A DNA stretch of 50,264 nucleotides from Paraphysomonas bandaiensis (taxonomy: Eukaryota > Protista > Chrysophyceae), in assembly GCA_965644295.1 (NCBI GenBank), contig CBFFRP010000422.1, positions 1-50,264 on the forward strand. Reading direction: 5' to 3'. Positions 6,165-50,264 of the stretch are shown in pieces (position 1 is the stretch's first letter; every line of letters starts with the position of its first letter). The notes beneath the pieces were generated by a model. It was not told the DNA's origin and searched no databases. It saw only the letters and a program-made list of their open reading frames with translations. A program made the position numbers and the translations under genes.

Positions 6165-9100
6165 TTAACCTCTTCGGGGTCGTTTCTTCTGCTGCTCCTC
6201 CACACTGTTAGACACACTCCTCTTAACCCCGGTAATCGTTTTCTCATGACGGCTGAAGATCTTCGTGGACAACGCCTTTGTAAAAATATCGGCCGCCATA
6301 TCATCCGTAGATACATGAATCAACTTTGCTGTAGGAAATTTTCCATTAACATGTTCTCTTATCCAGTGATACTTGATGTCAATATGCTTCGACCTCTTAT
6401 GATACACTGGATTCTCTGAAAGATCCTTTGCACTCTTACTATCCATAAAGAATGGAGTCGGCTTCGCTACCAAGAGTCCGAGCTCCTTGAACACCCCCCG
6501 AAGCCACACCAGTTCTTGCAAAGCCGCATACTCCGCCATATACTCAGATTCCATGCTCGAAGTCGCAACTGTGGTCTGAAGCTTGGATTGCCAGGCCAAA
6601 GCGCCCGCACATAAAAGCACGATGTATCCCGTTGTGGACCGCCTAGTCATCCTATCACCATCCCAGTCTGAATCACTGAATACATGTAAATCAAACTCAC
6701 TCCCACTGAATCTGATTCCCTTATCAACTGTACCACGTAAATATTTCAACAAATGAATAGCTAATCTGCAAGTCGCATATGTTGGAGAAGTACTAAATCG
6801 AGCCAATAACCCCACAGCGTAAGCCAGATCAGGTCTAGTGTGAATCGCCAAATGCAACACCGCTCCAATAATTCCTCTATACGGAAATGATTCGACCCAC
6901 TGCTTCTGCTCCTCTGTCAGCTCACGTTGCTCTGCCAACAAATCCTGAACATTGGTAGGTAGTGGAGTCTCCTTATTCTTACTGCTCTTCCCCATAAACG
7001 AATCGAATTTCTTTACAATATTCTTGGCATATTCCGATTGATCTAACATGTACCAGTCCTCTCCTCTCGTGATTCTGATATTCAGAAACCGTTTGCACAC
7101 ACCCAGATCGTGCATTTCAAACGTTTCGCAGAACCTACGTTTAACACTTTCTAAGTAGGTGAGATCAGCAGATGCAATGATAATATCATCAACATATATC
7201 AGCAATAAGTGCAATTGACCATTACTCCATCGCATATACAAGCATGTATCTAAAATGCAAGCAGTAAAATGTAACGATTTGATAAACTTGTCAATATGCT
7301 TGTTCCACTGCCTTGGTGATGACCGCAAACCATATAAGGCCTTGATCAATTGAAAACACCACCCCGCTGGCAACTCTTCATCAGGTGGAGGTGCCATATA
7401 CACATCCTCCTCAAGATCGGCATAACAAAACGCTGATGATACGTCCAACTGATGTACATGCATATGAAACATAAAGGCAATTGCAAGCACCAGTCGAATG
7501 GTTATTCCTTTGACCACTGGAGCAAACGTGGACTGCTCCTCCTCCGTTTTTTCTTGTAAATTTCCTAATGCAACCAGCCGCGCCTTATACTTGACTACAT
7601 TCCCCAGAAGGTCTCTCTTCACCGTGTGAACATACTTTGCTCGCACCAACTTCACTCCCCGTGGAGTCCGCACAATCTTTAAGACACGTCTCTTCAGTAG
7701 TGAGGTCTTCTCCACCTTCCGAGCTTCTCGCCACTTCATGTACTGTGGAGATCTCTCCGCTTCAGCATAGGAGTCTGGTATCTTAAAGTCATCATGTTGA
7801 AACTCTGCATGTTTAAAGTTAAAAGTGCATGCATCTGGCACCTCAACCATATTTATTTCTCCTAACACCGATGCGTTCGCCAACCTACGCTGTAGCCGTT
7901 TCCGCCGTACACGACCATCACCATCTAGTTCAATAGGTCGTCTAGGAGATATATACGAACCCATACCTTGCTCATCCTGAGCCCGCAAATCTTGCGGTGT
8001 GGGAGGAGCCCCGCTCGCATCCCCAGACCCACGGTCTGTCAAGGTCTGCAACCTCACGACTGTCCGTTGACAGGTTGGGTCAGGACTCTCCTGGAACCCT
8101 CCAGGTCTTCCCTGGTCCAGCTCCCTGGCTGGCGTAGTACTCAGGGCGTCCCCCTTTCCTATGTACCCGGTATTCCCGGGGGTTTCTGCAGTCATACGCA
8201 CCACGTCTTCGACGTGTATAGGCACCCGGTGCTCTATATGCTCGCGACCTGCAGTAACAAGTGAACGGTATGCTACAATCACACCCTTACGTTCTACAAC
8301 TCTTGTTGTCTTATACAGAAGTCCGTCCTCATCATCAATATGATACGTTCCTTCTAAGCTGACATAGTCGGATGCAAGCTTGGGTCTAGCGGCCTCCCGC
8401 ACTCGAAGAGCATCAATCTCTGCGAAATACTTCTCTGATCGTGATGGCGTTGACTCATCAGTCAATATATGGACTGTAGTCACCACCTTGTTTGATTCAG
8501 GAAGATATACATGATATCCTACCTTCTCATCAGAGTAACCCATTAAATATCCAACTAGAGCCTTATCCTCCCAATCCTTTCGTCGATCCGCCTTCGGTGA
8601 AAGAACATAAGTTCGACACCCCCATACCCTAAGATATCTCAAATTTGGAGGCTCACCCGTTAGAAACTCTATAGGAGACATATACCCTTTATCTGTTTTC
8701 GTTGGCAATCGAATCAAAATATATCTGGCTGCCATGTATGCATCCAGCCAAAATTGCGGTGGCAGTCCAGATTGGATTAGCATTGCAAGAGTCATCTCTC
8801 CAGCAGTTCTGAACTTCCTCTCCTCTATGGCATTCGTTTCTGGAGAGTCTGTTGAGCTCCACGTATGTTGATAGCACTCCTGTGTCCTAAGATACTGACG
8901 CAGCTCTTCACTGATTAACTCTCTTGCACCATCTGCATGATAGTGCTCCATCTTGAGCTTGTACCTTCTAACATCTCCTCTAAATAGCTCTTTGAAGACT
9001 TCTAAGATCGCTTCCCCAGTTCTGTGGACTAAACCCGTCGCCCAGAACATTTTGCTGGCATGATGCGTTATCTTTAACACATACCTCTCACCTCCTCTAG

Positions 9101-10922
9101 CAGGACAATTTAAGTACACAGCGATATCTGCTGAAAAATTCGGTCTAACGGAATTCTCGTCCTTCGTTCGGAAGCTGACTCGGGTTATCTTAGACCTGGC
9201 ACACACATCACACAAACACTGATTTTTGTGTACCTTGGCTGTGAGGTGTTTCCGTTTCAACCCTGTACCCATGATGAGCATCCTCTTATGTGCCTCTACT
9301 AAAGCATGTTTGTTGAAGTGACCCGCTCTCCGATGCAGCAACTCCAGCTCGTCCTCACCAGTCCTATCGCTAAGATTTACTTCACAATTACTCGGTGTAG
9401 ACACATCTGGAAGCTCCAACAGCTGCTGAGTTGGAACTGCAGTCATTCCATTCTTCATGGGTCCCTCCAGTACCAGTTCACCAGTATTACAGTCATAAAT
9501 TTGGATCCCATACCACACCGTGAATCGATAGCCCATTTCGTTCAGCTTACGTCCGGAGCACAGGCATCGATTGATCTGATCTGAAATTTCTATGTCTCTC
9601 CATGCTCCACGGGAACCCACACTTGTGATATGAATCTCTGATCCCTTCTTAGAGCCGCTTATCACCTTTGATGTATTCATATGAGTGTCAAGCATGGTCA
9701 CATCATTCATCAAGAACATTGATGATGAACAGCAGGTGTCAATATATGTATAATGCATGTCATCATTTACACTACATATATTCGTTTCATGTATATTGCA
9801 TGACAATTTCATAACATCCTCGATCATATTTGCTTCATCTTCATCAGAGAATTCTGCTGGTTCTCCACGCCGTATATTCTCTACTGTCAGCAGCCTTTTG
9901 TCCGGCTTCCTACCATGATTCTTCCCTTTCTCTCCTCTTCTAGAATGCTTTTTCTTCGTCGTTGGACAATCAGCAGCAAGATGTTCCAGAGACTTGCAAT
10001 TTCTGCATCCCGTGTATTCAGCACTTCCAGGACGCTGCCCTGATATCTCTCCATCCTTCTTCCTCTGCTTCCTCCTGCACTGTTCAGTTGAATGGCTATG
10101 AGGAATTCCTTCTTTCCTGCAATATCTACAGTTGCCCTTCTTACGCTTATCCCGTTCCGTTCGAGACCGTTTGCTCTTTTCAATGAAATTCAGCTCCTCC
10201 ACCTTCTTGCGTTTCCGCTCTAAAGCAATCCTTCCAGGAATGGTATCATCATACCGTTCTATCTTCCTTGATAATGTTGCATAATCAACATCATCAGGCA
10301 TCAAATACAAAGCAACATTCAGAGGAGCATATTCTTCATTCAACAGACCTTCTCGTAACCGTGTTATTTTTGAGAGCTCCGATATGTCCTGCTGCTGCTC
10401 CTGTAGCTCTTTCAGCAGTATTTCAAACCGTATTATATAGTCCTTCGCAGTCTCCTCCGGACGCATACGGAAAGAGCCATACTGAGTCAACAGCTCGCTG
10501 ATCTTGTTTTGCTTCCCTCCAGCAAAGCACTTCTTCAATTCATCAATCATAATATGCGCCTTAAACCTGTTGCTTCCTCTTCCATCAGCCTTGAACCCTT
10601 TATGTAAAAGATGGAATTTCTGAAGCGCCTTCGAAGATGATTGCACTGCCTCTCTGCAGTACGAATACGCTATGGCATTCGCCTTCCAGTACTTCTTCAC
10701 AGCCTGTCTGTAAGACTTCTCCTCCATTAACGTGAGTGGCTGTTCCCCGAAGTCGCTCTCCTTCGGTGGTGGCTCCACCGCTACTTCACTTTGCTCTTTC
10801 CTCATGAGGAATGTTTCGAAGTCCTCAATCCATTGTTCAACATTGCTCTCATTAAACTGTGGCACTACTCCTCTATCCTCCTTCTCTCCTCCTCGCTCGC
10901 TACCATGTTGAGAAATGCTCAT
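6165..10922 (-). CDS. Copia Gag-Pol polyprotein, 1585 aa
   Basis: Gag Zn knuckles (CRYC..H..C, CRNCKSLEHLAADC); protease YIDTCCS; integrase HRRAGH..CDVC, HADGARE, NAIEER; RT QLDVSSAF, LYGLRSSPRQW, YVDDII; RNase H FSDSDW, HIDIKYH, ADIFTKAL. Confidence 0.97.
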   Translation of the reverse strand: MSISQHGSERGGEKEDRGVVPQFNESNVEQWIEDFETFLMRKEQSEVAVEPPPKESDFGEQPLTLMEEKSYRQAVKKYWKANAIAYSYCREAVQSSSKALQKFHLLHKGFKADGRGSNRFKAHIMIDELKKCFAGGKQNKISELLTQYGSFRMRPEETAKDYIIRFEILLKELQEQQQDISELSKITRLREGLLNEEYAPLNVALYLMPDDVDYATLSRKIERYDDTIPGRIALERKRKKVEELNFIEKSKRSRTERDKRKKGNCRYCRKEGIPHSHSTEQCRRKQRKKDGEISGQRPGSAEYTGCRNCKSLEHLAADCPTTKKKHSRRGEKGKNHGRKPDKRLLTVENIRRGEPAEFSDEDEANMIEDVMKLSCNIHETNICSVNDDMHYTYIDTCCSSSMFLMNDVTMLDTHMNTSKVISGSKKGSEIHITSVGSRGAWRDIEISDQINRCLCSGRKLNEMGYRFTVWYGIQIYDCNTGELVLEGPMKNGMTAVPTQQLLELPDVSTPSNCEVNLSDRTGEDELELLHRRAGHFNKHALVEAHKRMLIMGTGLKRKHLTAKVHKNQCLCDVCARSKITRVSFRTKDENSVRPNFSADIAVYLNCPARGGERYVLKITHHASKMFWATGLVHRTGEAILEVFKELFRGDVRRYKLKMEHYHADGARELISEELRQYLRTQECYQHTWSSTDSPETNAIEERKFRTAGEMTLAMLIQSGLPPQFWLDAYMAARYILIRLPTKTDKGYMSPIEFLTGEPPNLRYLRVWGCRTYVLSPKADRRKDWEDKALVGYLMGYSDEKVGYHVYLPESNKVVTTVHILTDESTPSRSEKYFAEIDALRVREAARPKLASDYVSLEGTYHIDDEDGLLYKTTRVVERKGVIVAYRSLVTAGREHIEHRVPIHVEDVVRMTAETPGNTGYIGKGDALSTTPARELDQGRPGGFQESPDPTCQRTVVRLQTLTDRGSGDASGAPPTPQDLRAQDEQGMGSYISPRRPIELDGDGRVRRKRLQRRLANASVLGEINMVEVPDACTFNFKHAEFQHDDFKIPDSYAEAERSPQYMKWREARKVEKTSLLKRRVLKIVRTPRGVKLVRAKYVHTVKRDLLGNVVKYKARLVALGNLQEKTEEEQSTFAPVVKGITIRLVLAIAFMFHMHVHQLDVSSAFCYADLEEDVYMAPPPDEELPAGWCFQLIKALYGLRSSPRQWNKHIDKFIKSLHFTACILDTCLYMRWSNGQLHLLLIYVDDIIIASADLTYLESVKRRFCETFEMHDLGVCKRFLNIRITRGEDWYMLDQSEYAKNIVKKFDSFMGKSSKNKETPLPTNVQDLLAEQRELTEEQKQWVESFPYRGIIGAVLHLAIHTRPDLAYAVGLLARFSTSPTYATCRLAIHLLKYLRGTVDKGIRFSGSEFDLHVFSDSDWDGDRMTRRSTTGYIVLLCAGALAWQSKLQTTVATSSMESEYMAEYAALQELVWLRGVFKELGLLVAKPTPFFMDSKSAKDLSENPVYHKRSKHIDIKYHWIREHVNGKFPTAKLIHVSTDDMAADIFTKALSTKIFSRHEKTITGVKRSVSNSVEEQQKKRPRRG
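10891..10905 (-). promoter_or_regulatory. Primer binding site (TGGTAGCGAGCG..., possibly tRNA-iMet)
   Basis: TGG-starting sequence immediately after the 5' LTR end CA. TGGTAGC resembles iMet-type PBSs, but the tRNA identity is an inference. Confidence 0.7.
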
Positions 10923-13852: not shown

Positions 13853-15912
13853 ATGCCATTGACAGGTACCTACGAGTGGTCGGAGAAGAAGGACCTTATC
13901 CAGGTCTCTGTCCCTCTGAAGGGCGTGGCTCCCGCTAAGGTGGATATTATAGGTACACATATATAACCCTATGAGCTGTGTATGTATATATGACACATCT
14001 CTTCGTGTGTAGCCACATCGTCGACACTGAAGATTAACTACTCGCCGTACCTTATCGATATTGTGCTGCACGGAGTTATAGACTCCCAGCGACATAAAGC
14101 ACGAGTGAAGAATGGCAGCCTTATTGTTACACTGTACAAAGCCACTGCAGGGTTATGGGGGGCATTGGAGTTGTCTGATGAGGCTGAAGCAAAGCAAGTG
14201 CGTAAGGATGCTGTTGAGAAACAGCATGTTTTGGATGAAGAACTTGCTGAGAAGCGCAAGGACCGTAGAATAGCGGATGAAAGGCTTTCCACAAGGAAGC
14301 AAATGGCACTCGAAGAAGCCGAGAGAAACCGTTTAGAGTCAAAGAAAGAGGAAGAGAAAAAGATTGCAGAAGAAGATATGTATGCTACTTTTTCTAAAAT
14401 GCAGAGTTCAAGTGCATCCAGCGCGAGCAGCCCTGCAACGGCCACTCATGCTTCCCAAACTCTGCGAAAGATAGATGAAGAGATGGATTTAGATGATATC
14501 GATGAAGGTGAAGAAACTTTAGAAGAAACTTTAGAAGAACCTGCAGAGGAAATTTATTCTTCACACTACGAGCATGCGCCATGTGTTCTTAAAAGCAAAG
14601 AAGTAGAGAAGGAAGATGTCGACGCGGATATTAAGTACATTCCTCCGCCAAGACGCCCTGTAGGAGCCGAAGGGACTGCATCAGTGGGGATAAATTTTAC
14701 CCCTCGGGTGTTTCCTACTCCAATGAGAGAGTCTAAGCAGGCAGAAGAGGAAGATTGGGTGGCAAAAAACCGCAAGCATCTGAAGAAGCACGGTCAGCTT
14801 GGAAAGAATTTGACTAAAGGTCAGTATGAAGTTGCACTGATTGAGCGCCTCCTTCAGTTTGCTTAATATCATAAATGGTGCAAATAGAGTATACTATTAT
14901 TATTATTATTATGTATTTTTCTCAATCACATTGGGTAGGTAATGGGGTCGATATTAGCGAAGAAGATCCAGCGTGGCTGAAAGCCAAAGGGGACGACTTT
15001 TTCCGCGGGGGAGACTATCGATCCGCTATTAATGCATACAGTTCCGCCCTGGATGTCGACGAGAAAATGATATCATGTTTATCTAACCGCTCAATGTGTT
15101 ATTTAAAACTTGGAGCTGCTGCGGATTGTCGCGGGGATTGTGAAGATGGAATCGCTTTGCTGCGACAGGTTATATCAGACGACTCATCACTTCCGACTGA
15201 ACTTGTGAGCGCTCACAAGTCATTGGTGAAGCTTTTGCTCCGCAAAGGTATATCGAATTGTCAGTTGGGTTCTTTTGCTGGTGCCGTGGAGGATTACGAA
15301 CAGGGACTCCAAGTTCTCGAGGACATGGCGAGAGGAGATAAGTCACTTGTTGCGATGATTGAGTCTACGCGAAAAGATTTAGACAAGCTGCGGTTATTAC
15401 ATCAAGCTGATGTTTTAAAGAAAAAGGGAGATGCAGTTTTTGCGGACGGAGATCTCGGTTCTGCTCTTGGATTGTACTCCGAAGCACTTGAGGCTGCTCC
15501 GATGCACGTGGGATGCCTTTCTAACCGCGCTGCCTGTAAAATTGCCTCTAAAGACTTTAGCGGGTGTGTTGCTGACTGCAGTGCGGCATTAGCTACAATG
15601 GAAAGCCCATATGGTGGAAACAAGGGAGGATCAGCAGTTGAAAGCCTAGGTGCTGGAGCGATAAGTATGATGACCGCCATTCTTCCCCCTGAGGGAAGCG
15701 ATAGGAGAAAGGGTTGGTTCCTCAAAACTCTTGTCAGACGAGGAGCTGCTTACGCTCAGATGCGCATGATAGATGAGGCCATTGCAGACTATGGGAAAGC
15801 ATGCGCGATGGACCCAACCAATGACACCCTTAAAACAGACTTGAATAATTTAACCAATTTCAGAGCGGGTCAGCGCAATGCGCAACAGTCCAGCTTACGG
15901 AGTGATACGTAA
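13853..15912 (+). CDS. DNAAF4: Dynein axonemal assembly factor 4 (DYX1C1): CS/p23 domain + coiled coil + TPRs
   Basis: Spliced N-terminus MPLTGTYEWSEKKDLIQVSVPLKGV..LKINYSPYLIDIVL..LIVTLYK (intron ~13953-14012). INFTPRVFPTPMRES..EEEDW and EEDPAWLKAKGDDFF..SAINAYS are characteristic of DYX1C1. Second intron ~14820-14938. Confidence 0.92.
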
Positions 15913-40244: not shown

Positions 40245-41144
40245 TGCTAGGAGAGTTTAGTTTAAGAAGATGAAGGCAAAGTTATAATGTTAAGCATTGT
40301 TCTTACACTATACGATATATACTTCATCATGCACTCGCTCATGTAGATAGAAAACATGAGTCTATGTAGTAGTGACTCTTGGAGGAAAGAGTATAATCCC
40401 CACTCAGTGTCGACTTCTTTATTAGATATGCGTACATACATTGGTAAGGCAAAGAAAAATACATGACGAAAAATATGGGTACTGTCATCAAGGGCAGGAC
40501 CTGGTAACCGTTAGGCATTATAATTGCCGGGAACCGGACTACCATTAATGGTATCCCCTTAATGACCTGTACTGCTATATATAGAACTCAGTGTTTTAAG
40601 ATAATATAGTATCTCCTCTATACTCCGAAGAAACTCTAAACAATATTAGACAGCAATGTTCATGCAACTCTACAGGCACTCTGTGGCAGCTTTGTTCATT
40701 GTCTTCTCAATGTTCCAGAGTTAGAGAATAGTTTCCTGAGCAATATCCATAGCAATGTACCCATATACACTAAAACTCTAAAATAATCATTAAAAATATG
40801 CATATTTCACCTAGAAAGCTTTCATAAAACACCTATTTTTCCCCAAAGTTGAAAGAAGCAGCAGTACACAACTCTACCATCCAGCATTAATCGAATATGA
40901 TGGCCAAAAATATTGATGGCAGTGTAATTTACAGTCTGAGTCTTCTTCCGAGTGAATTCAGAGAATCCTCTCAGTGCTCTGTATCATATTTGTTCGTCGT
41001 GCAATAATCGCCTCAATCAAGATATACAGCGAGGCTGCACGACTCTTATGTGAATCATATATAGCCAAGAAAATCTTTCTCTGCCCTACGGTGGCAAATA
41101 CCGTTCAACACAAAGTTTCACCTTATTAACCAGCTTTAAGCTCA

Positions 41145-43685
41145 ATGTCCCTATTAAGGGTATGGATGAGTCATGTCAGTGTGCCTAGGGCCTCTTCTCC
41201 CTCTCTTCGGCCACATTTTGCTGATCACCTCGTCTCCGACAAATCTCTTGTTTTACCACGTTGTACACGTTCCAAGCCTCACTGCCTGGCTTTGCGACTT
41301 CCACCCAACCTAACGGCTTCGGCTAAACCACGTGCCTGCACTAATGCAGCGCTTACCGCATTCATATGCCATCACATCAGTAGACATCATAGTCTCACCT
41401 ATCGAATTCTACGGTTACAACCACTCAAAACGTGGCTCGTGCGAGCAGGTCCACGCAAAAGATCCTCTGGTGCTCTCCATATGGTCACAGAATACTCTCG
41501 AACCCTCACAACTGAGCTACAGGGCTGCCTCCTGATGTCCACACAAAACAACCCAACATGGTTTCTCTGTGGTCTATGCATCCAGCAGGTTACCCCCTCA
41601 TTCTGTTCACCTATCACTCCCTCAGCCCATTCCTCTTATTGGACAGACACTGTATTCCGCATACGGTATATTCGGCTACTGTACTACAGTGCCCTACAGG
41701 ATGTATACCACACAAAAACGGTGCTAGCATGCGGTACACCACGTAGCCCCGGACCCCATCAATACCCTACCAACACACACCCACTCAATCTTGCTGGTTA
41801 TGAGTATATCACCTATGCAAGGCCCCAAAGTTCACGCTTAAGTCTCTTGCGCAACAACACTCGGTTCACATACAGATATACACCAACACTCTCTAGAAGC
41901 AACTTCGACACAATTTCAATGAAACGTGAAACAAATTCCAACACTTCCAGAACCTTCACTCCAAAGTTTGTTCTTCCCCCCTCCTATCAACCAACCAACA
42001 TTGATGCGCAGATCAAAAATGCTATCAGAGAACAGAAGAAAGCCAAAGCTGACACTCCCCAGCTACAGCTCCCATCGGTACGCACCTTTCTGGGATGGGA
42101 AAATGACCTACCTGTGGGAGAGTACAAAACACTCGTCCTTACAAACATAAAAGCTGCTGATGATGCCACCTTCCTGGGGATAACACACTACCTTATCCAT
42201 GAGTTGGGGTTTCCCATTCAACCCCCTACCCCCCAAGACATCGCTACCTTCAGGGCAGCCAAGGATGCACGAACGTGTTCAGACTTACCCGCTCCCACAG
42301 CGAGTAGGGTAGTCCGAGCGTTCGACCTAGGCAGACCTGGGTACGAAGTCCGACAGGGCATGGGAGCGAATGTTACCGCTGACTCATGTATGTACTCCTC
42401 CCCTCTATGCTTTGACCTCCATGTAGAAACGGGCACATCAGTCGATGACAAAGGCCTCCTTCGGACCGAACGCCGACATGTCCAGATATCACTTTTCCGA
42501 ACGCCACGAGAACTCTTCGTGGGTCGCACCAAGGATGAGCCCTCGCTGATACCAGTGGCGGCTATATATGGGCTACATGCAGACTCAGCGCACACCAGAC
42601 CTGCACATGCCTTTAGGTTACGAAACACGCTGGATATGCTTCTCCGAACGGGAGGTTTCCCCACGCTACCTCTATACGAAGTATTCTGGACTCTAACACA
42701 CTATAGAGGCAAGACTCGAGCCACTGATAAAACATATAGGTTCTATCAGATTCTATTACTCCACGATCCCATTCACGATCAGGATCTAAGAGCTAAATTC
42801 TATAAAGCACTCTTCAATAATGAAATAGGAGGACATGTCGAAATCAACCTCGGCTCACTCTGTTGTAGAATGGTCAGCACTGAAACACCCACGCAAAAGC
42901 AGTCCAACTGGACACCGTCTCAAGAACTCTTCCGCATCGCTGTCTGCTCTGAAACACTCCTATCTCCCATCCAAGTCTGGCAAGCCTGTGAGGCCATAGG
43001 TATCCCATCCACGGACATAGAGGACATCATTTGGACCGCCCGCAACCCACTCACAAGCGGGCGCAAAGAAAAAGAACGCTTAGTTGAACAAACCTACATT
43101 TACCTGGACGACAGGAATACCAAGATCAAACTCTGTTGGGAAATCTCACGCACAGGTATCGTGCCTTTACTGCGCAAAGCTCTGGGTGACGAAACTCTAA
43201 GGCTCCTCTATCACACCATAGCAGTCCCCCCTGGCCTCCCTACTCAGCGGTTTCTATACGGCCTCCATAAGGCCACAGACACAGCAACAAACGCCCCTCC
43301 CATAATACCGCCTCCAACGTCCCTTCAACCCTTCGGTCCAACTGTTGCTCCACAAATGCAGACCGATACACCGCGATCGTACACTCCCAAACGACAGCGA
43401 CAGATGGACACATCCCCATCAACAGAGCCAGCACCAGCTCCCACCTGCCCAGAGCTCTGCGAAATAGCTCTACACATCGCTTCAGATCTTGTACCTCTGT
43501 CAAAAATCCATGCCATCCTCGCGCAAATGGAAAACGCGGTTGCAGCTCTCTATGAGATCGATGCTGGGGCGACTCTCACGGTACTTGATTACTATAAAAA
43601 CAAGGTAGATCACAGTATCCCAGAAAGGTCCTCAGAAGAACACTCTCGGGTGGACTCGGACATCTTCGGCTCCGACTCCAACTGA
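41145..43685 (+). CDS. LINE ORF1 (gag-like position), no recognisable domain
   Basis: 846-codon open frame in first position. The real start may be downstream (e.g. ATG 41919, MKRETNS). Confidence 0.6.
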   Translation: MSLLRVWMSHVSVPRASSPSLRPHFADHLVSDKSLVLPRCTRSKPHCLALRLPPNLTASAKPRACTNAALTAFICHHISRHHSLTYRILRLQPLKTWLVRAGPRKRSSGALHMVTEYSRTLTTELQGCLLMSTQNNPTWFLCGLCIQQVTPSFCSPITPSAHSSYWTDTVFRIRYIRLLYYSALQDVYHTKTVLACGTPRSPGPHQYPTNTHPLNLAGYEYITYARPQSSRLSLLRNNTRFTYRYTPTLSRSNFDTISMKRETNSNTSRTFTPKFVLPPSYQPTNIDAQIKNAIREQKKAKADTPQLQLPSVRTFLGWENDLPVGEYKTLVLTNIKAADDATFLGITHYLIHELGFPIQPPTPQDIATFRAAKDARTCSDLPAPTASRVVRAFDLGRPGYEVRQGMGANVTADSCMYSSPLCFDLHVETGTSVDDKGLLRTERRHVQISLFRTPRELFVGRTKDEPSLIPVAAIYGLHADSAHTRPAHAFRLRNTLDMLLRTGGFPTLPLYEVFWTLTHYRGKTRATDKTYRFYQILLLHDPIHDQDLRAKFYKALFNNEIGGHVEINLGSLCCRMVSTETPTQKQSNWTPSQELFRIAVCSETLLSPIQVWQACEAIGIPSTDIEDIIWTARNPLTSGRKEKERLVEQTYIYLDDRNTKIKLCWEISRTGIVPLLRKALGDETLRLLYHTIAVPPGLPTQRFLYGLHKATDTATNAPPIIPPPTSLQPFGPTVAPQMQTDTPRSYTPKRQRQMDTSPSTEPAPAPTCPELCEIALHIASDLVPLSKIHAILAQMENAVAALYEIDAGATLTVLDYYKNKVDHSIPERSSEEHSRVDSDIFGSDSN

Positions 43686-43733
43686 CTCCTACTGGACTGG
43701 GACACAACGAACATCAAACGTACACTCATAGAA

Positions 43734-46700
43734 GTGTCCGCAGCTGCTCACACGTGGTTATCCCCCAGTCCACACTTACATATCCATAGTGGGCCCTCAC
43801 CTGACACAACGACCTTCGCCTGTAGCACCCACATGCGTCCACCACGTAAACCGCCAGACAAACAGTCGAGATCCACCAGTGTACATCCCACGAAAAGGCA
43901 TCAAGGACCGCACTTTTCCTGTGATAATAGTGGTGATGGACCACGAAAACGGCCGGCCTCGACACAACGTAAGCGAAACAACCTCCGGCGGCTCAGTCGC
44001 AAACGAACTCTGCAACAATTTCGTGAAGGAACAATCCAGTCCCTCCCTCCACACATACAACGTCAACAGACACGAAACAAGCTCCGCATCCGTGCCCACA
44101 ACAAGCAAGCATGGCGAGAGCATTTACAACACCTGGCACAACAGTGTGTAGACACACACAACATCGTGACCACTCCTATACCTGACACAGCACCCACAGC
44201 TGTTACAGCACCCCCCCGTCCAGAAGACTCCACACATACTATTTGCCTCCCTCCGCCCACAGTGGAGGACGAACAAGAGAGAACAATCACTGACACAAGT
44301 GTACTGCCTCAACTATTTGTGCCGCACCCTCTGCCAGCTGCCTTCACGGACCCCGGACTGCAGAATTGGTCCTTCTACTCGCCCAGCGGTCTGTTAGCCA
44401 TTGCCATACACGAAGAGGTGGTTCACAGTGTCATGTCCATGCTACAATCGAGGCACGCTTTAGAACGCATAGAACAGCACCTCAGATGTTCGCTTGAGGA
44501 GGGGAAAATGCTGGTTGCACGTCACTACACACACACAGAATACAACAACACACCAATGGAGGGCTTCTGCGGACTAGCTGCTATTGCCGCAATATACCAC
44601 AAACAACCGGAGGAGGACCACTACCCGTATTTAAATCCCGATGATCCAGCCTCGAAAGCAAAACTGCTCCAAGTCATTCAGACAAGCAGGACGGTACTTA
44701 GTACCTACACGCTCGCTGAAGCCAAGATGCTTAACTTTGCATGCATCCGGAAGAAGCTCCGACAGCAGCTAACAACGTACAACAAAGCACTACGCCGCAA
44801 ACGACCAACTGCTGTCGGAATACCCCCAGAGCAATGGGGCTACACAGACATCATAGCCCTCCTGGCAGAAACCCTGAGTATACGAATTCGTATCTGGCAA
44901 GATTCACCAGTGGACCTTGGCCACAACTGGGCGTACTGGTCTACCCACCATTCCTCCTTCCTTCCACAAACTCAATTCCTTCCATCTTATGATGTGTTTT
45001 GCTCCAACGACCACTTCTTCCTGGACACCAAATACCCGGTGGAGTTGGAACTACACGCGCTACTCGAGAGAATTCCTGACCTCGTCATCATGCGTCTCCA
45101 AAATGTGTTGCAATATCATTCCAAGGGAATGCAAGGAGTACATCGTGCCAGGTCCATCAACCATCCCTCCCACGCCCTTCAGGGGAAGGAATTCTCTTCC
45201 GATAACAGCGGTGACGGACCCAGCAAATCCACCCACACATTACCCTTACCCACTAAGGATGCCACCACACCGTATGCAACTCTATTTGACTATTTCCCAG
45301 TCAAACGGAGGCCACCTACCACCAACCCTACTCAACTGAACACCATGGGAACTCTAGCATTAGCCCCAGACGGCCCATCCTCACACTCCACTACCACTCC
45401 TGACATCAGGCCGGATGCACTGCCCAAGGACATTGCCACACACACCCGACACTACACAGAGGGCTGGGGTCACACGCCCTTTCACTCCGATCTGCTGAAC
45501 AACTGGGTTAGATATGATGAAACCCAAACCATTGCTGCCTCCCCACAGGGAAACCTTTTAAAAGAAATATATGCACACATGCTATCCCCTGCCTGTACAG
45601 ACATATGGGAAGGATTCATAGCCAAGGCTTCCAGGACGGACAACTATGATCTCATGATATCATTCACGCTACCAGAGCACAAATTGGATACCACGCACAG
45701 CGCCCTACTAGTTGCCCAGCATCTCGCGAATGGCAACAAACCCTGGGCAGACTCCACTCATGTTGTATCTAGGCATGTGCGGACCCTTTGCCTGACAAAG
45801 GGTATTCCCTCAACAGCCACTGTTAGTCTCCGTAAGACACTCATGCAATATGAATCCTCGACTCCACACACAGGACTACATCTAGACACGGAGGATTTCC
45901 AACTGCTACTCGATCTTCTCTCCATACCATACAGACTATGGGACGCTGTTCAACCGCACCTGGCGCCTGGTTGGGCACAGCTGTCACCATTCTCCAGACA
46001 GGCACTAACAGTGCACGCTTCTACCAACACTGTGGTAACCCATGACATCATACGCAGCCAGCATGGGTTTCACATACTCAATGCAACAAATATCCCCATC
46101 TGCATCATGCACGCTCTAACACGGACTCAGGAGCGGCTATCCTGTTTTCTACAACACCAGACCTCCAGACAGAGCACCAATATCCTCTGGACTTCTGAGC
46201 CGTCAACTGTACCACCTATGCCACATGAGCACAGAGAGCAACAGGAACAGAGGGAAGTAATTGCAGTCTCCTTGTCACCGAGAGCTCGACGTCAACTACG
46301 ACAGATGAACCCCACGGACCGTCGACAACTCAGGCTCCATATGTGCGACATGAGCAGAGTCTACCGCCTCACCCTCAGACCCTCAGCCCTTCGCACACAA
46401 CAACATATCCCTAGTGATGGGTACTGTGCATACAGCACACTCTATCATCTGCACATTCTTGCTTCAAGCAGGCGACACACTCGCTCCTGTCTAAAATTAG
46501 ACCTCAAACAACGCAAGGACCGTCACACGCTAGCATCTTTCATAAATACATTAGGCACCCAAGCGTTCGACATACTGCAACGGGAGTGCATGGCCCATCA
46601 CACACTTCAGCCACTACGACATAAGTTAGATCACGCACAGGCCGCACTTTTAATACCTACCAAAACAACATACACTACGGAAGACGACATAACTCACTGG

Positions 46701-47741
46701 CTCTCAGTGCGAGAGGTCCACCTTTTAGCCTCTACTATCAACCCCTGCACGACGTGGGCGCTAAATGGTAATTACCTCAGCATTGTAGGCATCCCTACTG
46801 ACAAAGTAGCTTATAACATCGCATGGAAGGTGGACGAACTTAGGGACGCTATTCGTGATAACTACTACCATGTCATACTACAAGATGCTCACTACTTCCT
46901 CTTAGACCCTGCCGGTCTTTCTACTGCCCTAGACAACGCCCTACTATCTCTTGAAAACACCTTGGCCACCAGTATACTCTCAACGGCTGACCCCATCGCT
47001 CCACCTACACTCCCCGCGGACTCAATCACGAACAACAATAGGACATCAAAGATGACCAGCACCAGAACAACCTCGTCAAGCAGCACCAAGTTAGCACGAA
47101 CAAATCGACAGATTCTGCAGGCTTCAACCCCTGGAGCACTACCATCGCACAAGAAGATGCAGTTGAAACACGCCCAAACTGCGTTAACAAGTCGATGCCA
47201 GCCAACCCGGAAAGCCAAAAAGGTCGTAAATTATGATGAAAGTGACCAACCAACGAACCTTCACAACTCACACCCAACCACGACCACACGAACGATCAGA
47301 CCAACTCCAGCACTAGATACCACCGGCTGGGACAGGGACTGGTCAAGAAAGTTCTACATTGCGTACGCCGATAACACTGCCAAAGGACTATCCCTTTATG
47401 CGAAGAACACATTCCCAGCAGACGTCATCATTGCTGAGTACAAAGGCAAACGCTATCCACTAACAAAGATGAGTCAGTCTACAAGGCGTTCTGATTACAT
47501 AGTTCAAGACAGTACTGGTACCTTCGCAATAGATGGCTTTGACCAAGTCCGACAATGTGTAACATGCGAAGCTGGGTATATTAATGACCCCCTAGCCACA
47601 AACATGGCTAATGTCAAGTTTGTCACGAAAAATAAACGCCTCTATGTCCGTACAATACGTTCCATTGCTAAGGATGAAGAACTTCTCATCAACTACGGAC
47701 ATCATCATTGGTGTGATCAGCATGGCCACTTGAGATATTAA
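43734..47741 (+). CDS. Accessory polyprotein: 2 OTU-like cysteine protease modules, 1 degenerate module, C-terminal SET domain
   Basis: PMEGFCGLAAI..QWGYTDIIALLAETLSIRIRIW..CSNDHFF and IPSDGYCAYSTL..HWLSVREVHLLA..LQDAHYF. SET: KGLSLYAK..IAEYKG..SDYIV..IDG..AGYINDP..ANVKF..VRTIRSIAKDEELLINYG..W. The track start is GTG, and the first ATG is 43833. Confidence 0.8.
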   Translation: MSAAAHTWLSPSPHLHIHSGPSPDTTTFACSTHMRPPRKPPDKQSRSTSVHPTKRHQGPHFSCDNSGDGPRKRPASTQRKRNNLRRLSRKRTLQQFREGTIQSLPPHIQRQQTRNKLRIRAHNKQAWREHLQHLAQQCVDTHNIVTTPIPDTAPTAVTAPPRPEDSTHTICLPPPTVEDEQERTITDTSVLPQLFVPHPLPAAFTDPGLQNWSFYSPSGLLAIAIHEEVVHSVMSMLQSRHALERIEQHLRCSLEEGKMLVARHYTHTEYNNTPMEGFCGLAAIAAIYHKQPEEDHYPYLNPDDPASKAKLLQVIQTSRTVLSTYTLAEAKMLNFACIRKKLRQQLTTYNKALRRKRPTAVGIPPEQWGYTDIIALLAETLSIRIRIWQDSPVDLGHNWAYWSTHHSSFLPQTQFLPSYDVFCSNDHFFLDTKYPVELELHALLERIPDLVIMRLQNVLQYHSKGMQGVHRARSINHPSHALQGKEFSSDNSGDGPSKSTHTLPLPTKDATTPYATLFDYFPVKRRPPTTNPTQLNTMGTLALAPDGPSSHSTTTPDIRPDALPKDIATHTRHYTEGWGHTPFHSDLLNNWVRYDETQTIAASPQGNLLKEIYAHMLSPACTDIWEGFIAKASRTDNYDLMISFTLPEHKLDTTHSALLVAQHLANGNKPWADSTHVVSRHVRTLCLTKGIPSTATVSLRKTLMQYESSTPHTGLHLDTEDFQLLLDLLSIPYRLWDAVQPHLAPGWAQLSPFSRQALTVHASTNTVVTHDIIRSQHGFHILNATNIPICIMHALTRTQERLSCFLQHQTSRQSTNILWTSEPSTVPPMPHEHREQQEQREVIAVSLSPRARRQLRQMNPTDRRQLRLHMCDMSRVYRLTLRPSALRTQQHIPSDGYCAYSTLYHLHILASSRRHTRSCLKLDLKQRKDRHTLASFINTLGTQAFDILQRECMAHHTLQPLRHKLDHAQAALLIPTKTTYTTEDDITHWLSVREVHLLASTINPCTTWALNGNYLSIVGIPTDKVAYNIAWKVDELRDAIRDNYYHVILQDAHYFLLDPAGLSTALDNALLSLENTLATSILSTADPIAPPTLPADSITNNNRTSKMTSTRTTSSSSTKLARTNRQILQASTPGALPSHKKMQLKHAQTALTSRCQPTRKAKKVVNYDESDQPTNLHNSHPTTTTRTIRPTPALDTTGWDRDWSRKFYIAYADNTAKGLSLYAKNTFPADVIIAEYKGKRYPLTKMSQSTRRSDYIVQDSTGTFAIDGFDQVRQCVTCEAGYINDPLATNMANVKFVTKNKRLYVRTIRSIAKDEELLINYGHHHWCDQHGHLRY

Positions 47742-47873
47742 TCCAAGCCAGGGCTGCGTACGACAGCGACATAGGCGGTGCCAATATAGCAGTATGGGAC
47801 AGACTCCGCAGACAAGAGTGGAACTCCTACAGAGACCTCCAGCAGCATCCCCAAGGATCCCTCGGGAGCAGCC

Positions 47874-50264
47874 ATGGGACTCCGACTCTCCACATGGAAC
47901 ACAAATGGCAATCCAGCATCACACACAGGTAAAGCCCAAGCTATCATCCGACACTTTAAGCGGCAAAAATTGGACGTGCTCCTATTACAGGATGTCCGTC
48001 TAACAGAAACTCAGGCCAACTTCTTCACGCGTATCATCGAAGATGCACTCCAGGGAACAAGAATATGCCTCTTCCTCAGCAAGCAGCCAAAACTGACTTC
48101 AAGAGACCCACTAATGGGGGGTACAGTAGTCATAATCAGCGAATACTGGAAGCGCCGTCTCGCCTTCACAAGGGCTGACTTTACGGGACTTGGTTTAGTG
48201 AGCCGACTAGAGTTCAAAACGTCGGTGGCGCACACCCTAGTACTAATAAGCGTCTATCTCACTCCCCGAAGCCATCCACGCCGGGCACTTGCACATTATG
48301 GAGCAAATTGACCAAGCTGAGGGAGAGCGTCCCGTGGTATCTGTACTGCTGACCCCTACAAGCTCCTATGCGACATCCTTACGAAATGGGTCACTAAGGC
48401 CAGAGCCAAGGACCATACTGTCATTGTCGCCGGCTGACTTCAATGGCTCCATGGAGACAAATCACTAAGGCAGAGACATACGACCACTTGCCGACAAACT
48501 CCAACTGGCTGCACCACTCCATGAGCTTCTCCTACCCAGGAAAACATATCATACCTTCCACAGATTAGACAAAGGAATATCGCGGATTGATCATATCTCT
48601 ACACACGCCGTTACCTCCGAACATGTCTGTTACGGACACTGGCTGCCTTGACTCCCCCCTCATTACTCGCAGCCAGCCTTCGATCATCGACCGGTCTGGG
48701 TCGGTTTCACCGTACCAGTCAATCTCGACCCTCGACCACCTGAGTCGCACCTCCGAATCCCCCCCCGTCTCAATGTAAACCCGAAGGACTCAAGGAAGTA
48801 CCATACACCGCAAGACTCCTCCAACTTCATGCACAACTATCACATTTAGACAACGGATCGACTACCATACTCCCTCCTGAGGTGGCAGCCAACAGACTAG
48901 CGGCCATCCATCACATAACCCTCCAGGCTTCGCTTGAGGCGAAGCGTCCTGCATGTACACATAGCACACGCCTACACGAACGTTGTCAGCGCACACGCTC
49001 AAAGTTCAAGAATGGCTTTTCCCCGGAAATGAGAGTAATACAGGAAGGAATGCTCATGGTTTTGCGGATTATCCAAAAGATGTTCGGTTCTGCCGGATAC
49101 AAACGGCATGGATATGGCGCGGCCCCCCCGGCAAGCCACCCCCCCCCACCCACGAAATCATCACTGCATGGTTCGCCCGATGGGACTCACTATCTCAGGA
49201 GTTCTCAGGGTCACATCAAAGGCATATCGGACATCTGCTTCTGGTGCAGCCACCGCAACGCCGGGCCCACGAGTAATCCTGGGTTGGAACGCAAAGCAAG
49301 CCACCGAGCAAAACCTTCTCCGAATCTGCCTCGCGACTGACGAGGAGACCCCTTCATGGACATTGAGCGCAGGACAGAAATGCGGCGGACTGAGACTCGC
49401 TATCAGCACCAAGCTGATGTGGATAGGCACTAAGCACAGTGCAGAAAAGAGAACTTCCAGCAATTCTTCCAGAAAATTGGTCCCTAGTTGTCAAAACACC
49501 ACTCCGACTCACCACGGTGAAAACGAACTGACCGGGCACATCCTCCACAACGCCGCAAGACGATTCGTGAAGGCATTAATGCGCATCGTGCGTGAACGAT
49601 CATGCCAAACCTCCTGGACTTCGACCTCCGACGGCACAGACAGACTCCAGGATGAACCCTACATGGTGGAAACCACTTCTGAGATCCGGGCTCAGCTGAG
49701 CATGCCGAGACCACTCCACCCCTTGTCTCTGAAAATTCCTCTCTCCCCTGCCAACCGGGGTTCACGAACGGGCCCTTTGTACCAAGACCACCTCGGCCAT
49801 GGCAGCCACACTCAAATCTACTCTTGCAAAAGACATCACCCAGGATGAATTCTACTGCACACTTCACTCTCTCTCCTTCAACCGCGCGCCTGGACCCTCA
49901 ATGGTCTCCTCCAACATGGTCAAATCCTGGCCACCGGTAGTTCAGCGAGAGGCTTACATCCTCACCAGATCTCTCTGGAAACATAAACATGTGCCCATTT
50001 GGTGGAGAGACAGGGTAATGTCTCCCATTCTCAAGAAACCAGGAGAATCCTCCTCACTAATCTCCGACCGATTGGTCTGCTTGAAGTCAGTAGGAAAATA
50101 TTAACAAGGATAATCACTCATAGAATTCTTACCGTATGGGAGGAACAGAAAGTTTTGCATCCGTCCCAGCATGGTTATCGCTGGAGGAACGGGACGGACA
50201 CAGCGATACTAGCGGGTACTCGCGGCTGCAGAAGAAGCACGACGAAAAGGCGACCAGCATATAT
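47874..50264 (+). pseudogene. LINE pol: AP endonuclease + N-terminal part of reverse transcriptase, frameshifted
   Basis: LRLSTWNTNG, LDVLLLQDVRL, LISVYL, VIVAG/DFN (extra T at 48435), TFHR..SRIDHI, FDHRPVW; then ITQDEF..NRAPGPS..PILKKPG, LRPIGLLEVSRKILTRII, SQHGYR. Several frame changes. Confidence 0.9.

What the first reader, a model, noticed from the sequence alone, without database searches (positions are those of the whole stretch)
41145..50264. Giant three-ORF LINE carrying its own chromatin/ubiquitin toolkit (OTU-like proteases + SET methyltransferase)
Seen: between ORF1 and the APE-RT ORF sits an intact 1335-codon ORF with the same strand, composition and lack of introns. It encodes OTU-like modules and a C-terminal SET domain. 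Known: LINEs normally have one or two ORFs. Accessory enzymes have been reported in retroelements (e.g. a Josephin-like protease in Dualen/RandI, cytosine methyltransferases in dinoflagellate retrotransposons), but I do not know of an OTU+SET cassette in a LINE. Inference: the element may write lysine methylation and remove ubiquitin at its own locus or on its proteins, to counter silencing or degradation, or to self-limit.
Basis: partly seen in the sequence, partly recalled or inferred. Interest (0 to 1): 0.92.

Follow-up and report, generated by a model that had tools for sequence, protein, structure and literature searches.

The report
Giant LINE with SET and OTU-like domains

Summary
It is present in at least 38 copies. 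A full-length 12.3-kb copy is bounded by a 10-bp target-site duplication. The region is conserved in metagenomic relatives at 25-36% identity and is under purifying selection (dN/dS 0.36).

The three-ORF layout is not real for the family. In 20 of 23 copies SET runs in frame into the endonuclease. The window differs by a -1/-2 indel pair, the first of 37 indels in the last 2.5 kb of the contig, and contigs from four public runs carry the in-frame version. ORF1 and ORF2 share one frame, split by a single conserved UGA.

SET passes Pfam's threshold. The cysteine modules get no Pfam hit, but a confident model matches only OTU deubiquitinases at the top (Z up to 8.2), with invariant Cys and His.

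Function is inferred: ubiquitin-like deconjugation or polyprotein cleavage, plus lysine methylation coupled to target nicking.

Partial precedents are Ulp1 proteases in NeSL/Utopia LINEs and OTU and SET ORFs in Helentrons. I found no OTU+SET LINE described.

The scan has reported this family before on other contigs of this genome.

The parts
41071..50264 (+). The part of the LINE copy held in the window. Its 5' end is at 41071, and the window/contig ends inside the RT domain.
   Evidence: Similarity to the full-length copy on C255 starts exactly at 41071 and runs collinearly to the window end (98.3% identity). The C255 copy is 12.3 kb long and has a 10-bp target-site duplication.
41145..43685 (+). 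ORF1, 846 aa, an orphan protein with no recognisable domain. It ends in a TGA at 43683-43685.
   Evidence: ORF listed. No Pfam hit. No relatives outside this genome. At least 14 near-identical copies plus a 59%-identical sister family.
43683..43685 (+). The single in-frame UGA stop between ORF1 and ORF2, in the context AAC UGA CUC CUA. It is a candidate read-through site.
   Evidence: ORF1 and ORF2 are in the same frame (41145 and 43734 are both 0 mod 3). The frame is open from 43686 onward. The UGA and its context are the same in 10 distinct copies, with one base changed in C358. No significant RNA structure lies downstream (z -1.3).
43686..47738 (+). The first ATG is at 43833.
   Evidence: In other copies this frame continues without a stop into APE-RT.
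44346..45113 (+). OTU-like module 1 (ORF2 aa ~205-460). Cys279 is at 44568-44570 and His427 at 45012-45014.
   Evidence: The P-x-x-G-[YF]-C, W and H columns are invariant in the alignment with module 3 and with modules of relatives. BLASTP aligns it to modules of P0001 and P0003.
45396..46178 (+). OTU-like module 2 (aa ~555-815). It is degenerate: the Cys box is missing, while the Trp and His-box half is retained.
   Evidence: Added to alignment A1, it aligns only in the C-terminal half and has no G-x-C box.
46266..47003 (+). OTU-like module 3 (aa 845-1090). Cys898 is at 46425-46427 and His1053 at 46890-46892.
   Evidence: AlphaFold2 model built with a 23-sequence alignment: pLDDT 81, pTM 0.77. 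The top 19 VIA-align matches are all OTU domains, Z 5.8-8.2 with 123-156 residues aligned. The top 47 Foldseek PDB hits are all OTU, E 0.08-0.4. Viral OTU-bearing proteins are also hit, best E 3.8e-4.
47319..47721 (+). SET domain (aa ~1196-1330; Pfam match aa 1218-1322 = 47385-47699).
   Evidence: Pfam SET 36.2 bits. A family profile hits PRDM12, EZH2, KMT2C/D, SET8 and SETD7 in the PDB at E 5e-8 to 1e-4. Conserved in P0001, P0002, P0004 and P0005.
47722..47807 (+). Private frameshifted stretch that creates the false end of the '1335-codon ORF' (stops at 47739, 47772 and 47787).
   Evidence: A 1-nt deletion at 47722 and a 2-nt deletion at 47807 relative to C255, C132, C433 and C440. 20 of 23 copies have a 243-nt open linker here. 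Logan contigs of runs X1, X6 and X7 carry the inserted G and TT.
47874..48710 (+). AP-endonuclease (APE) domain, broken by frameshifts in this copy.
   Evidence: Pfam Exo_endo_phos 22.8 bits on the first piece, and 38.6 bits on the intact copy L039. Motif positions are and indels.
49886..50264 (+). Start of the reverse-transcriptase domain, cut by the window end.
   Evidence: RT motifs lie in another frame at 49886, 50059 and 50173. Pfam RVT_1 scores 55 bits on the intact copies.

Best explanation
The stretch is the 5' three-quarters of one copy of a young, multi-copy APE-type non-LTR retrotransposon (LINE) of a marine stramenopile flagellate. A full-length element is about 12.3 kb. It has a short 5' UTR, then ORF1 (846 aa, orphan), then a single in-frame UGA. 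ORF2 follows, at about 3,200 codons. Its order is: a low-complexity N-terminus; OTU-fold cysteine-protease module 1 (intact Cys/His); module 2 (Cys box lost); module 3 (intact); SET domain; a linker of about 60 aa; AP endonuclease; reverse transcriptase; an RNase-H-like D-E-D-H-D region; and a CCHC motif. A 245-nt 3' UTR without poly(A) ends the element. It is therefore a two-ORF (effectively one-frame) LINE whose polymerase has a 1,380-aa accessory N-terminal extension, not a three-ORF element. The stop at 47741 is private to this contig end; it is either an assembly error or decay of this one copy. How it works is inferred, not shown. ORF2 is made either by read-through of the leaky-context UGA, as an ORF1-ORF2 polyprotein, or by initiation at the first ATG. 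I take the OTU-fold modules to be ubiquitin-like deconjugating or self-cleaving cysteine proteases (about 0.6 that at least one is active). They would either protect the element's proteins or RNP from ubiquitin-dependent restriction or cut the polyprotein. I take the SET domain, which sits directly before the endonuclease in every relative that has it, to bind and probably methylate a lysine on nucleosomal or RNP proteins at the site of target-primed reverse transcription (about 0.55 that it is catalytically active).
For: Copy number and linkage: at least 38 matches to the OTU/SET region, at least 30 to pol and 53 to ORF1. Single open frames of 2819-3016 aa join OTU/SET to APE-RT. Mobility as one unit: the C255 copy has a 10-bp target-site duplication around 12.3 kb, copies share a 3' end, and their 5' truncation points vary. 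The false stop: there are no indels from 41071 to 47721 and then 37 from 47722 to 50264. 20 of 23 copies are open across the SET-APE linker. Contigs of independent runs carry the in-frame version. The frameshift also destroys a post-SET segment that is conserved in relatives. The UGA is in frame and conserved in 10 copies. Ancient association: metagenomic relatives at 25-36% identity have SET+APE+RT in one protein (P0001, P0002, P0004, P0005) and carry 1-2 of the same Cys modules. Selection between subfamilies: dN/dS is 0.36 for OTU/SET (31 synonymous against 37 non-synonymous changes, binomial p 6e-5) and 0.16 for pol. OTU fold and SET identity. Transcripts: contigs of a poly(A) marine metatranscriptome cover 44926-48900 in pieces. 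A relative (P0006) has a Ulp1/C48 protease instead. NeSL/Utopia LINEs also have Ulp1 (PMC4640811). This suggests that LINEs have repeatedly recruited ubiquitin-like deconjugases.
Against: No Pfam OTU hit. Foldseek E-values are weak (0.08 or more against the PDB), and VIA Z 8.2 is only at the level the tool calls trustworthy. No third catalytic residue is conserved. I could only estimate from alignment ranges that Cys and His fall on the OTU catalytic positions. The SET 'NH' cofactor motif is 'ND' in the whole family, as in some PR domains, so activity is uncertain. The most abundant subfamily lacks most of ORF1 and the Cys box of module 1, so those parts are dispensable or supplied in trans. 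RNase H is supported by motif only; the profile search against the PDB found nothing. Read-through is unsupported beyond the shared frame and the stop context. In relative P0004's contig, ORF1 and ORF2 are in different frames. The RNA contigs may include DNA carry-over and do not show one long transcript.
Confidence: 0.85

Rival explanations
1. The element truly has three ORFs. In this reading the OTU/SET protein is made separately from APE-RT, and the stop at 47741 is functional.
For: The window sequence as given has the stop and an ATG at 47874.
Against: Only this copy has it, and 20 of 23 copies are open. The stop lies between two compensating indels at the start of an indel-ridden contig end. 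Read-derived contigs from four runs show the in-frame form. Relatives at 36% identity are fused.
Confidence: 0.03
2. The OTU-like/SET region is a passenger: a host gene fragment transduced or captured recently, carried along without any function for the element.
For: The abundant C440-type subfamily has lost module 1's Cys box, and module 2 is degenerate. ORF1 and the modules have no Pfam family.
Against: SET followed by APE and RT is conserved in distant relatives from other organisms. The Cys modules recur with invariant P/G/C/W/H columns. dN/dS is 0.36, p 6e-5. No copy-number evidence points to a host paralogue: a profile of the module finds only 27 proteins among 1.84 billion representatives.
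Confidence: 0.05
3. The cysteine modules are polyprotein-processing proteases, like arterivirus or tymovirus papain/OTU-type proteases, and not deubiquitinases. They would cut the ORF1-ORF2 or ORF2 polyprotein into ORF1, SET and APE-RT products.
For: There is one continuous frame of about 4,050 codons with a single UGA. The protease modules are in tandem. A short acidic G-D-G-P motif is repeated at aa 63-70 and 489-496 and near the N-termini of relatives. Thomas et al. suggest the same option for Helentron OTUs (PMC4067079).
Against: No cleavage sites are known. The best structural matches are deubiquitinases, and the nairovirus OTUs among them do not process polyproteins (own knowledge). A relative uses a Ulp1 deSUMOylase-type domain at the C-terminus instead.
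Confidence: 0.3
4. The SET domain is catalytically dead. It serves only as a lysine or histone-tail binding module that tethers the endonuclease to chromatin, much as chromodomains do in chromoviruses.
For: The NH motif is replaced by ND in all family members. The best PDB profile hit is a PR domain, PRDM12. The position directly before APE is fixed.
Against: The G-x-G motif, the internal Tyr and the C-terminal E-E-L-x-x-x-Y-G motif are retained. The Pfam SET score is above threshold.
Confidence: 0.3

Closest known systems
[quoted passage not shown]
   Same: Both are LINEs whose RT-containing protein carries a protease of the ubiquitin-like-deconjugase type as an N-terminal accessory domain. 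A relative of the present family (P0006) even has a Ulp1/C48 domain.
   Different: Those elements use a restriction-like endonuclease, have one Ulp1 domain and no SET, and are target-specific. Here the endonuclease is APE-type, the protease fold is OTU rather than Ulp1, there are up to three modules, and a SET domain follows.
Helentrons and the Phytophthora proto-Helentron (Thomas et al. 2014, PMC4067079)
   Same: These are transposable elements that encode OTU-like cysteine proteases and, in an oomycete (also a stramenopile), a SET-domain ORF. Helentrons also carry a LINE-derived AP endonuclease. So the trio of OTU, SET and APE has been seen in a mobile element before.
   Different: Helentrons are rolling-circle DNA transposons, and their OTU and SET are separate ORFs recognised by standard domain models. 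Here all three domains are fused in one LINE ORF2 with RT, and the protease modules are too divergent for Pfam. No sequence link between the two was tested.
Nairovirus L protein (N-terminal viral OTU fused to a giant polymerase)
   Same: An OTU-fold domain sits at the N-terminus of a polymerase polyprotein of roughly 4,000 aa (own knowledge). Nairovirus OTUs are the best structural matches: 6dx3_A Z 8.2 and 6dwx_A Z 7.6.
   Different: That is an RNA virus with an RNA-dependent RNA polymerase. It has a single OTU with proven deubiquitinase/deISGylase activity (own knowledge). Sequence identity is only 9-16%.
Retrotransposons that captured chromatin or DNA-modifying enzymes: DNMT-carrying elements of dinoflagellates and charophytes (PMC5890265), MBD-carrying Copia (PMC6673714), and SET-TE fusions counted in a 172-genome survey (bioRxiv 10.1101/2021.11.30.470311)
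   Same: The principle is the same: a retroelement carries a host-type epigenetic writer or reader. The survey lists SET methyltransferases among TE-fused gene models.
   Different: None of the texts I could read describes a SET fused upstream of the APE of a LINE, or a SET together with OTU modules.
I-group LINE clades (I, Ingi, Nimb, Loa, R1, Tad1, Outcast) with APE-RT-RNase H
   Same: The domain order is APE, RT, an RNase-H-like D-E-D-H-D region and a C-terminal Cys-His motif. PMC4640811 lists these clades as RNase-H-bearing.
   Different: No RT phylogeny was made, so clade membership is open. The element is 12.3 kb long with a 1,380-aa N-terminal extension of ORF2, which to my knowledge is far beyond typical members.

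Membership tests
APE-type non-LTR retrotransposon (LINE) | Reverse transcriptase of the non-LTR type in the same ORF as an N-terminal AP endonuclease | tested here: met
   Pfam RVT_1 55 bits and Exo_endo_phos 38 bits in single ORFs of 2819 and 3016 aa.
APE-type non-LTR retrotransposon (LINE) | Target-site duplication of variable sequence flanking a full-length copy, a common 3' end, and variable 5' truncation | tested here: met
   A 10-bp duplication flanks the C255 copy. C255, C433 and C440 share the same 3' end with unrelated flanks. Copies start at ORF2 aa 2, 159, 255, 326, 398, 556-641 and so on.
APE-type non-LTR retrotransposon (LINE) | Poly(A) or simple-repeat 3' tail | tested here: not met
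   The 3' end has no A-run in three copies. To my knowledge several LINE clades lack such tails, so this does not exclude membership.
I group of LINEs | RNase H domain downstream of RT | tested here: inconclusive
   D, E, D, H and D columns are invariant in six family members. There is no Pfam or PDB sequence hit.
I group of LINEs | RT groups with I-group clades in a phylogeny | not tested
OTU (ovarian tumour) cysteine protease superfamily | OTU fold | tested here: met
   Model pLDDT 81. The top 19 VIA matches (Z 5.8-8.2) and the top 47 Foldseek PDB hits are all OTU domains. The support is moderate, since the E-values are weak.
OTU (ovarian tumour) cysteine protease superfamily | Catalytic Cys in an N-terminal helix start and His in a C-terminal strand | tested here: inconclusive
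   Cys and His are invariant or nearly so across 23 modules, 145-168 residues apart. Aligned ranges place them within about 2 residues of Cys40 and His151, the CCHFV OTU catalytic numbering from my own knowledge applied to Taggert virus vOTU. No residue-level superposition was available. No conserved third residue was found.
OTU (ovarian tumour) cysteine protease superfamily | Sequence match to Pfam OTU (PF02338) or Peptidase_C65 | tested here: not met
   No hit even at E 10 for each module scanned alone. None of 10 profile-search relatives has any Pfam domain.
OTU (ovarian tumour) cysteine protease superfamily | Isopeptidase or protease activity | not testable with these tools
   Needs a biochemical assay.
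SET-domain lysine methyltransferases | Sequence match above the curated threshold | tested here: met
   PF00856 scores 36.2 bits against 22.4. A family profile hits 135 PDB SET/PR sequences, best 5e-8.
SET-domain lysine methyltransferases | Cofactor and catalytic motifs: G-x-G, N-H-S/C, and E-L-x-F/Y-D-Y with the catalytic Tyr | tested here: inconclusive
   The G-x-G-like motif, the internal Tyr and the E-E-L-x-x-x-Y-G motif are present. N-H is N-D in all six family members.
SET-domain lysine methyltransferases | Methyltransferase activity and substrate | not testable with these tools
   Needs a biochemical assay.

The most novel reading that the evidence does not exclude
The element is a LINE that edits chromatin as part of its own integration or survival. 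In this reading the SET domain, held next to the endonuclease, methylates nucleosomal histones at the nicked target or at the new copy. The OTU modules strip ubiquitin from histones or from the element's RNP. A retrotransposon would then carry both a histone-mark writer and a ubiquitin eraser. A further possibility is that the OTU/SET/APE set of stramenopile Helentrons and this LINE family share an origin.
Probability: 0.2. Interest if true: 0.85.

Novelty: new variant of a known kind. Interest (0 to 1): 0.62.

Why it matters
To my knowledge LINEs are usually described as minimal machines: an RNA-binding ORF1 plus an endonuclease-RT protein. This family shows that a LINE can keep a 1,380-aa accessory block fused to its polymerase across deep divergence (relatives at 25-36% identity). 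The block holds a SET domain and OTU-fold protease modules. The family can still be young, abundant and apparently transcribed in ocean plankton. If the domains are active, this would be a retrotransposon-encoded histone or protein lysine methyltransferase and a deubiquitinase-like enzyme. That bears on how mobile elements evade or exploit chromatin- and ubiquitin-based silencing. It would also add to the cases of TEs capturing epigenetic machinery (DNMT, MBD, chromodomain). The fixed SET-APE arrangement makes one hypothesis directly testable: that target choice or nicking is coupled to recognition of a histone lysine. For annotation, the case shows how an indel-ridden contig end can create a false extra ORF.

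Tried and rejected
- Pfam on the whole ORF and on each Cys module alone found no OTU and no other protease family.
- phmmer of the ORF against PDB sequences gave only weak SET hits.
- ORF1 has no Pfam hit. It shows no similarity to the upstream ORFs of relatives' contigs, no ESM-Atlas neighbour, and only itself in the 5.8-billion-protein search. It remains an orphan.
- RNase H: Pfam, phmmer and a six-sequence profile against the PDB found nothing. Only the motif pattern supports it.
- RNA structure after the UGA is not significant (z -1.3).
- The ESM Atlas fold search gave mixed weak rows: an OTU cluster at TM 0.38/0.47 and an otubain cluster among unrelated ones.
There is therefore no dN/dS at that depth and no check of its ORF1-ORF2 junction.
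- No RT phylogeny was made, for lack of named reference sequences.
- Literature: five searches for OTU/SET in LINEs found no description. An earlier agent's remark that the design was 'noted once before in cryptophyte algae' could not be traced.

Full report
**What is in the window**

- ORF1 lies at 41145-43685 (846 aa).
- An open frame of 1335 codons lies at 43734-47741.
- An endonuclease-like piece starts at 47874.
- All lie on the + strand, in an A+C-rich stretch of about 50% GC that differs from the 37-45% GC upstream.
- Pfam finds a SET domain at aa 1218-1322 of the middle frame (36.2 bits, cut-off 22.4) and Exo_endo_phos in the 47874 piece.
- Downstream of 48311 the pol frame is broken repeatedly, and the window ends inside the RT.

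**It is a mobile element, and the OTU/SET region belongs to it**

The window is contig C422 of a 62.5-Mb assembly. Searches of that genome gave these counts:
- The 1335-aa frame has at least 38 matches, most at 95-99% identity.
- Pol has at least 30 scored matches among 1,361 candidates.
- ORF1 has 53 matches.

On other contigs the OTU/SET region and APE-RT form a single open frame. The frame is 2819 aa on C433 (a 5'-truncated copy), 3016 aa on C440 and more than 2256 aa on C132. Pfam finds SET, Exo_endo_phos and RVT_1 in that order in these frames.

The 5' end of the window copy is at 41071, by comparison with the full-length copy on C255. The C255 copy is about 12.3 kb long. It is flanked by a 10-bp target-site duplication and ends without a poly(A) tail at the same base as the C433 and C440 copies, whose flanks are unrelated. 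Copies begin at many different 5' points. These are the marks of target-primed reverse transcription of one unit.

**The three-ORF layout is not real**

ORF1, the middle frame and the APE piece are all in the same reading frame. Aligned with C255, the window copy has no indel from 41071 to 47721. It then has 37 indels, mostly 1-7-nt insertions, between 47722 and the contig end, and 83 substitutions in one kilobase.

The first two indels are a 1-nt deletion at 47722 and a 2-nt deletion at 47807. Together they shift the frame for 85 nt and create the stops at 47739, 47772 and 47787. Of 23 copies that cover this junction, 20 have an open 243-nt linker, and only the window copy has this version.

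Logan contigs were laid on 43000-48900 from three DNA runs with different organism labels and one poly(A) marine metatranscriptome. The DNA-run contigs carry the inserted G at 47721 and the TT at 47807, and the metatranscriptome contigs do not cover those two places. At the later sites (48260-48673) the extra letters of the window are missing in the DNA runs, and in the metatranscriptome contigs at the four of these sites they support. The best DNA run holds only 0.53 of the sampled words of 46900-50264, which fits a contig end full of private errors.

The frameshift also removes a post-SET segment that is conserved in distant relatives. The stop is therefore an assembly artefact or private decay. 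The family's ORF2 is one frame of about 3,200 codons.

**ORF1 and ORF2 form one frame with a single stop**

ORF1 ends in UGA (43683-43685), in the context AAC UGA CUC CUA. The same frame stays open through the 49 codons to the first ATG at 43833. The UGA is present in 10 distinct copies, with identical context in nine; C358 has one base changed.

This layout allows an ORF1-ORF2 polyprotein by read-through. To my knowledge UGA followed by C is a leaky context. I found no stimulatory RNA structure, and in a relative's contig the two ORFs are in different frames. Read-through is therefore a hypothesis only.

A second subfamily (C440 type) has a single 3016-aa ORF. An N-terminal 190 aa resembling the start of ORF1 (67% identity) is joined to ORF2 from aa 398 onward through a private stretch of about 80 aa. 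In contig depth it is about ten times more abundant than the two-ORF form. Most of ORF1 and the Cys box of module 1 are therefore dispensable in cis.

**Are the modules OTU?**

Sequence models say nothing here. However, the module recurs in several places:
- Twice intact and once degenerate in this ORF2.
- Twice in the metagenomic relatives P0001 and P0002.
- Once in P0003 and once in P0004.

Eight modules share invariant P-x-x-G-x-C, W and H columns, with Cys and His 145-168 residues apart. A profile search of 1.84 billion representatives found only 27 further proteins, none with a Pfam domain. In the 23-sequence alignment, W is invariant and H nearly so. Module 2 lacks the Cys box.

An AlphaFold2 model of module 3 reached pLDDT 65 with 8 sequences and 81 (pTM 0.77) with 23 sequences. 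With the better model:
- The 19 best of 48,161 PDB representatives by VIA-align are all OTU domains. These include nairovirus vOTUs, otubains, OTUD1/2/3, yeast Otu2 and bacterial OTUs. Z is 5.8-8.2, with 123-156 residues aligned. Unrelated helical hits below them reach Z 5.6 or less and align only 47-84 residues.
- The top 47 Foldseek PDB hits are all OTU, but with weak E-values of 0.08-0.4.
- In the viral library the best hit has E 3.8e-4, and many OTU-bearing viral proteins follow.
- From the aligned ranges, Cys898 and His1053 fall within about two residues of the catalytic Cys and His of Taggert virus vOTU. That estimate uses the CCHFV OTU numbering (Cys40/His151) from my own knowledge.

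I conclude that the modules have an OTU-like fold with a plausible Cys/His dyad. Membership of the Pfam OTU family is not met, and activity is untested.

**SET**

A profile of the domain from six family members hits 135 SET or PR-domain sequences of solved structures. The best are PRDM12 (5e-8), EZH2, KMT2C/D, SET1, SET8 and SETD7. The G-x-G-like motif, the internal Tyr and the C-terminal E-E-L-x-x-x-Y-G motif are kept. The N-H motif is N-D throughout the family. The fold is certain; catalysis is open.

SET sits about 60-90 residues before the APE domain in this family and in P0001 and P0002, and upstream of RT in P0004 and P0005. P0005 has SET but no Cys module. SET is therefore the older and more constant accessory domain, and the number of protease modules varies from 0 to 3.

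**Selection and expression**

I compared two intact ORFs of different subfamilies.
- dN/dS is 0.36 over the OTU/SET region (31 synonymous and 37 non-synonymous differences, p 6e-5 against neutrality).
- It is 0.28 for APE, 0.08 for RT and 0.16 for pol overall.

Contigs of a poly(A) metatranscriptome cover much of 44926-48900. This is compatible with transcription but does not prove a single transcript.

**Host**

The runs that hold the sequence are marine. A neighbouring gene (14875-15912) is a DNAAF4-like dynein assembly factor. Its best named relatives are a chrysophyte (44%) and oomycetes (37-40%). The host is therefore a flagellated stramenopile. I could not name the species.

**Comparison with what is known**

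- Cysteine proteases of the ubiquitin-like-deconjugase type are known in LINEs: Ulp1 in NeSL and Utopia (PMC4640811).
- OTU-like protease ORFs are known in Helentrons, a SET ORF in a Phytophthora proto-Helentron, and a LINE-derived APE in Helentrons (PMC4067079).
- SET-TE fusions were counted in a 172-genome survey (bioRxiv 10.1101/2021.11.30.470311).
- DNMT and MBD captures by retrotransposons are documented.
- I found no description of a LINE whose ORF2 fuses OTU-fold modules and SET to APE-RT.
- Earlier agents of this scan reached the same reading on other contigs of this genome. One agent's remark about cryptophytes could not be verified.

**Verdict**

This is a real and unusual LINE family, and a new variant of a known kind. 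The 'three ORFs' and the 'intact' middle ORF do not. The proposed chromatin and ubiquitin function is plausible but wholly inferred.

Noticed in passing
window 6165-10922 (-): An intact-looking 1585-aa Ty1/copia polyprotein ORF (RVT_2 187 bits, retroviral SH3-like domain).
   Followed up: no
window 14875-15912 (+): A DNAAF4/DYX1C1-like TPR gene. Its best named relatives are a chrysophyte and oomycetes, which points to a flagellated stramenopile host.
   Followed up: partly
window 44926 onward; L040 (C440:3800-13700): A single-ORF subfamily (3016 aa). An ORF1-like N-terminus of 190 aa and a private stretch of about 230 nt with a small tandem repeat are joined to ORF2 at aa 398. Its contig depth is about ten times that of the two-ORF form.
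   Followed up: partly
window 45229 (junction seen in loose ends of runs X1, X7 and X16): A very abundant short deletion derivative joins 45229 directly to the last ~100 codons of ORF2. Many genomic loci have ORFs of about 450 aa that begin with the ORF1-like N-terminus. This is probably a non-autonomous family riding on this LINE.
   Followed up: no
window 43920-43943 and 45198-45221: The eight-residue motif S-D-N-S-G-D-G-P occurs twice in ORF2, once before module 1 and once before module 2. A G-D-G-P motif lies near the N-termini of relatives P0001, P0002 and P0004. It may be a cleavage or degron-like signal. It does not match the canonical 2A motif as I recall it.
   Followed up: no
G000 C143, C146, C394, C116 (not fetched): A sister family in the same genome is 72% identical in pol and 59% in ORF1. 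In one copy (C116) the ORF1 frame stays open for 2167 aa, that is, without the stop after ORF1.
   Followed up: no
P0006 (metagenomic relative, 2519 aa): This related RT protein has a C-terminal Ulp1/C48 protease (69 bits) in place of the OTU-like/SET N-terminus.
   Followed up: no
C433, about 1.1 kb downstream of the copy in L039 (joined C433 reverse-strand coordinates 15006-15184): A separate 179-bp, 100%-identical copy of the element's 3' UTR tail. It is either an extremely 5'-truncated insertion or the tail of a non-autonomous element.
   Followed up: no
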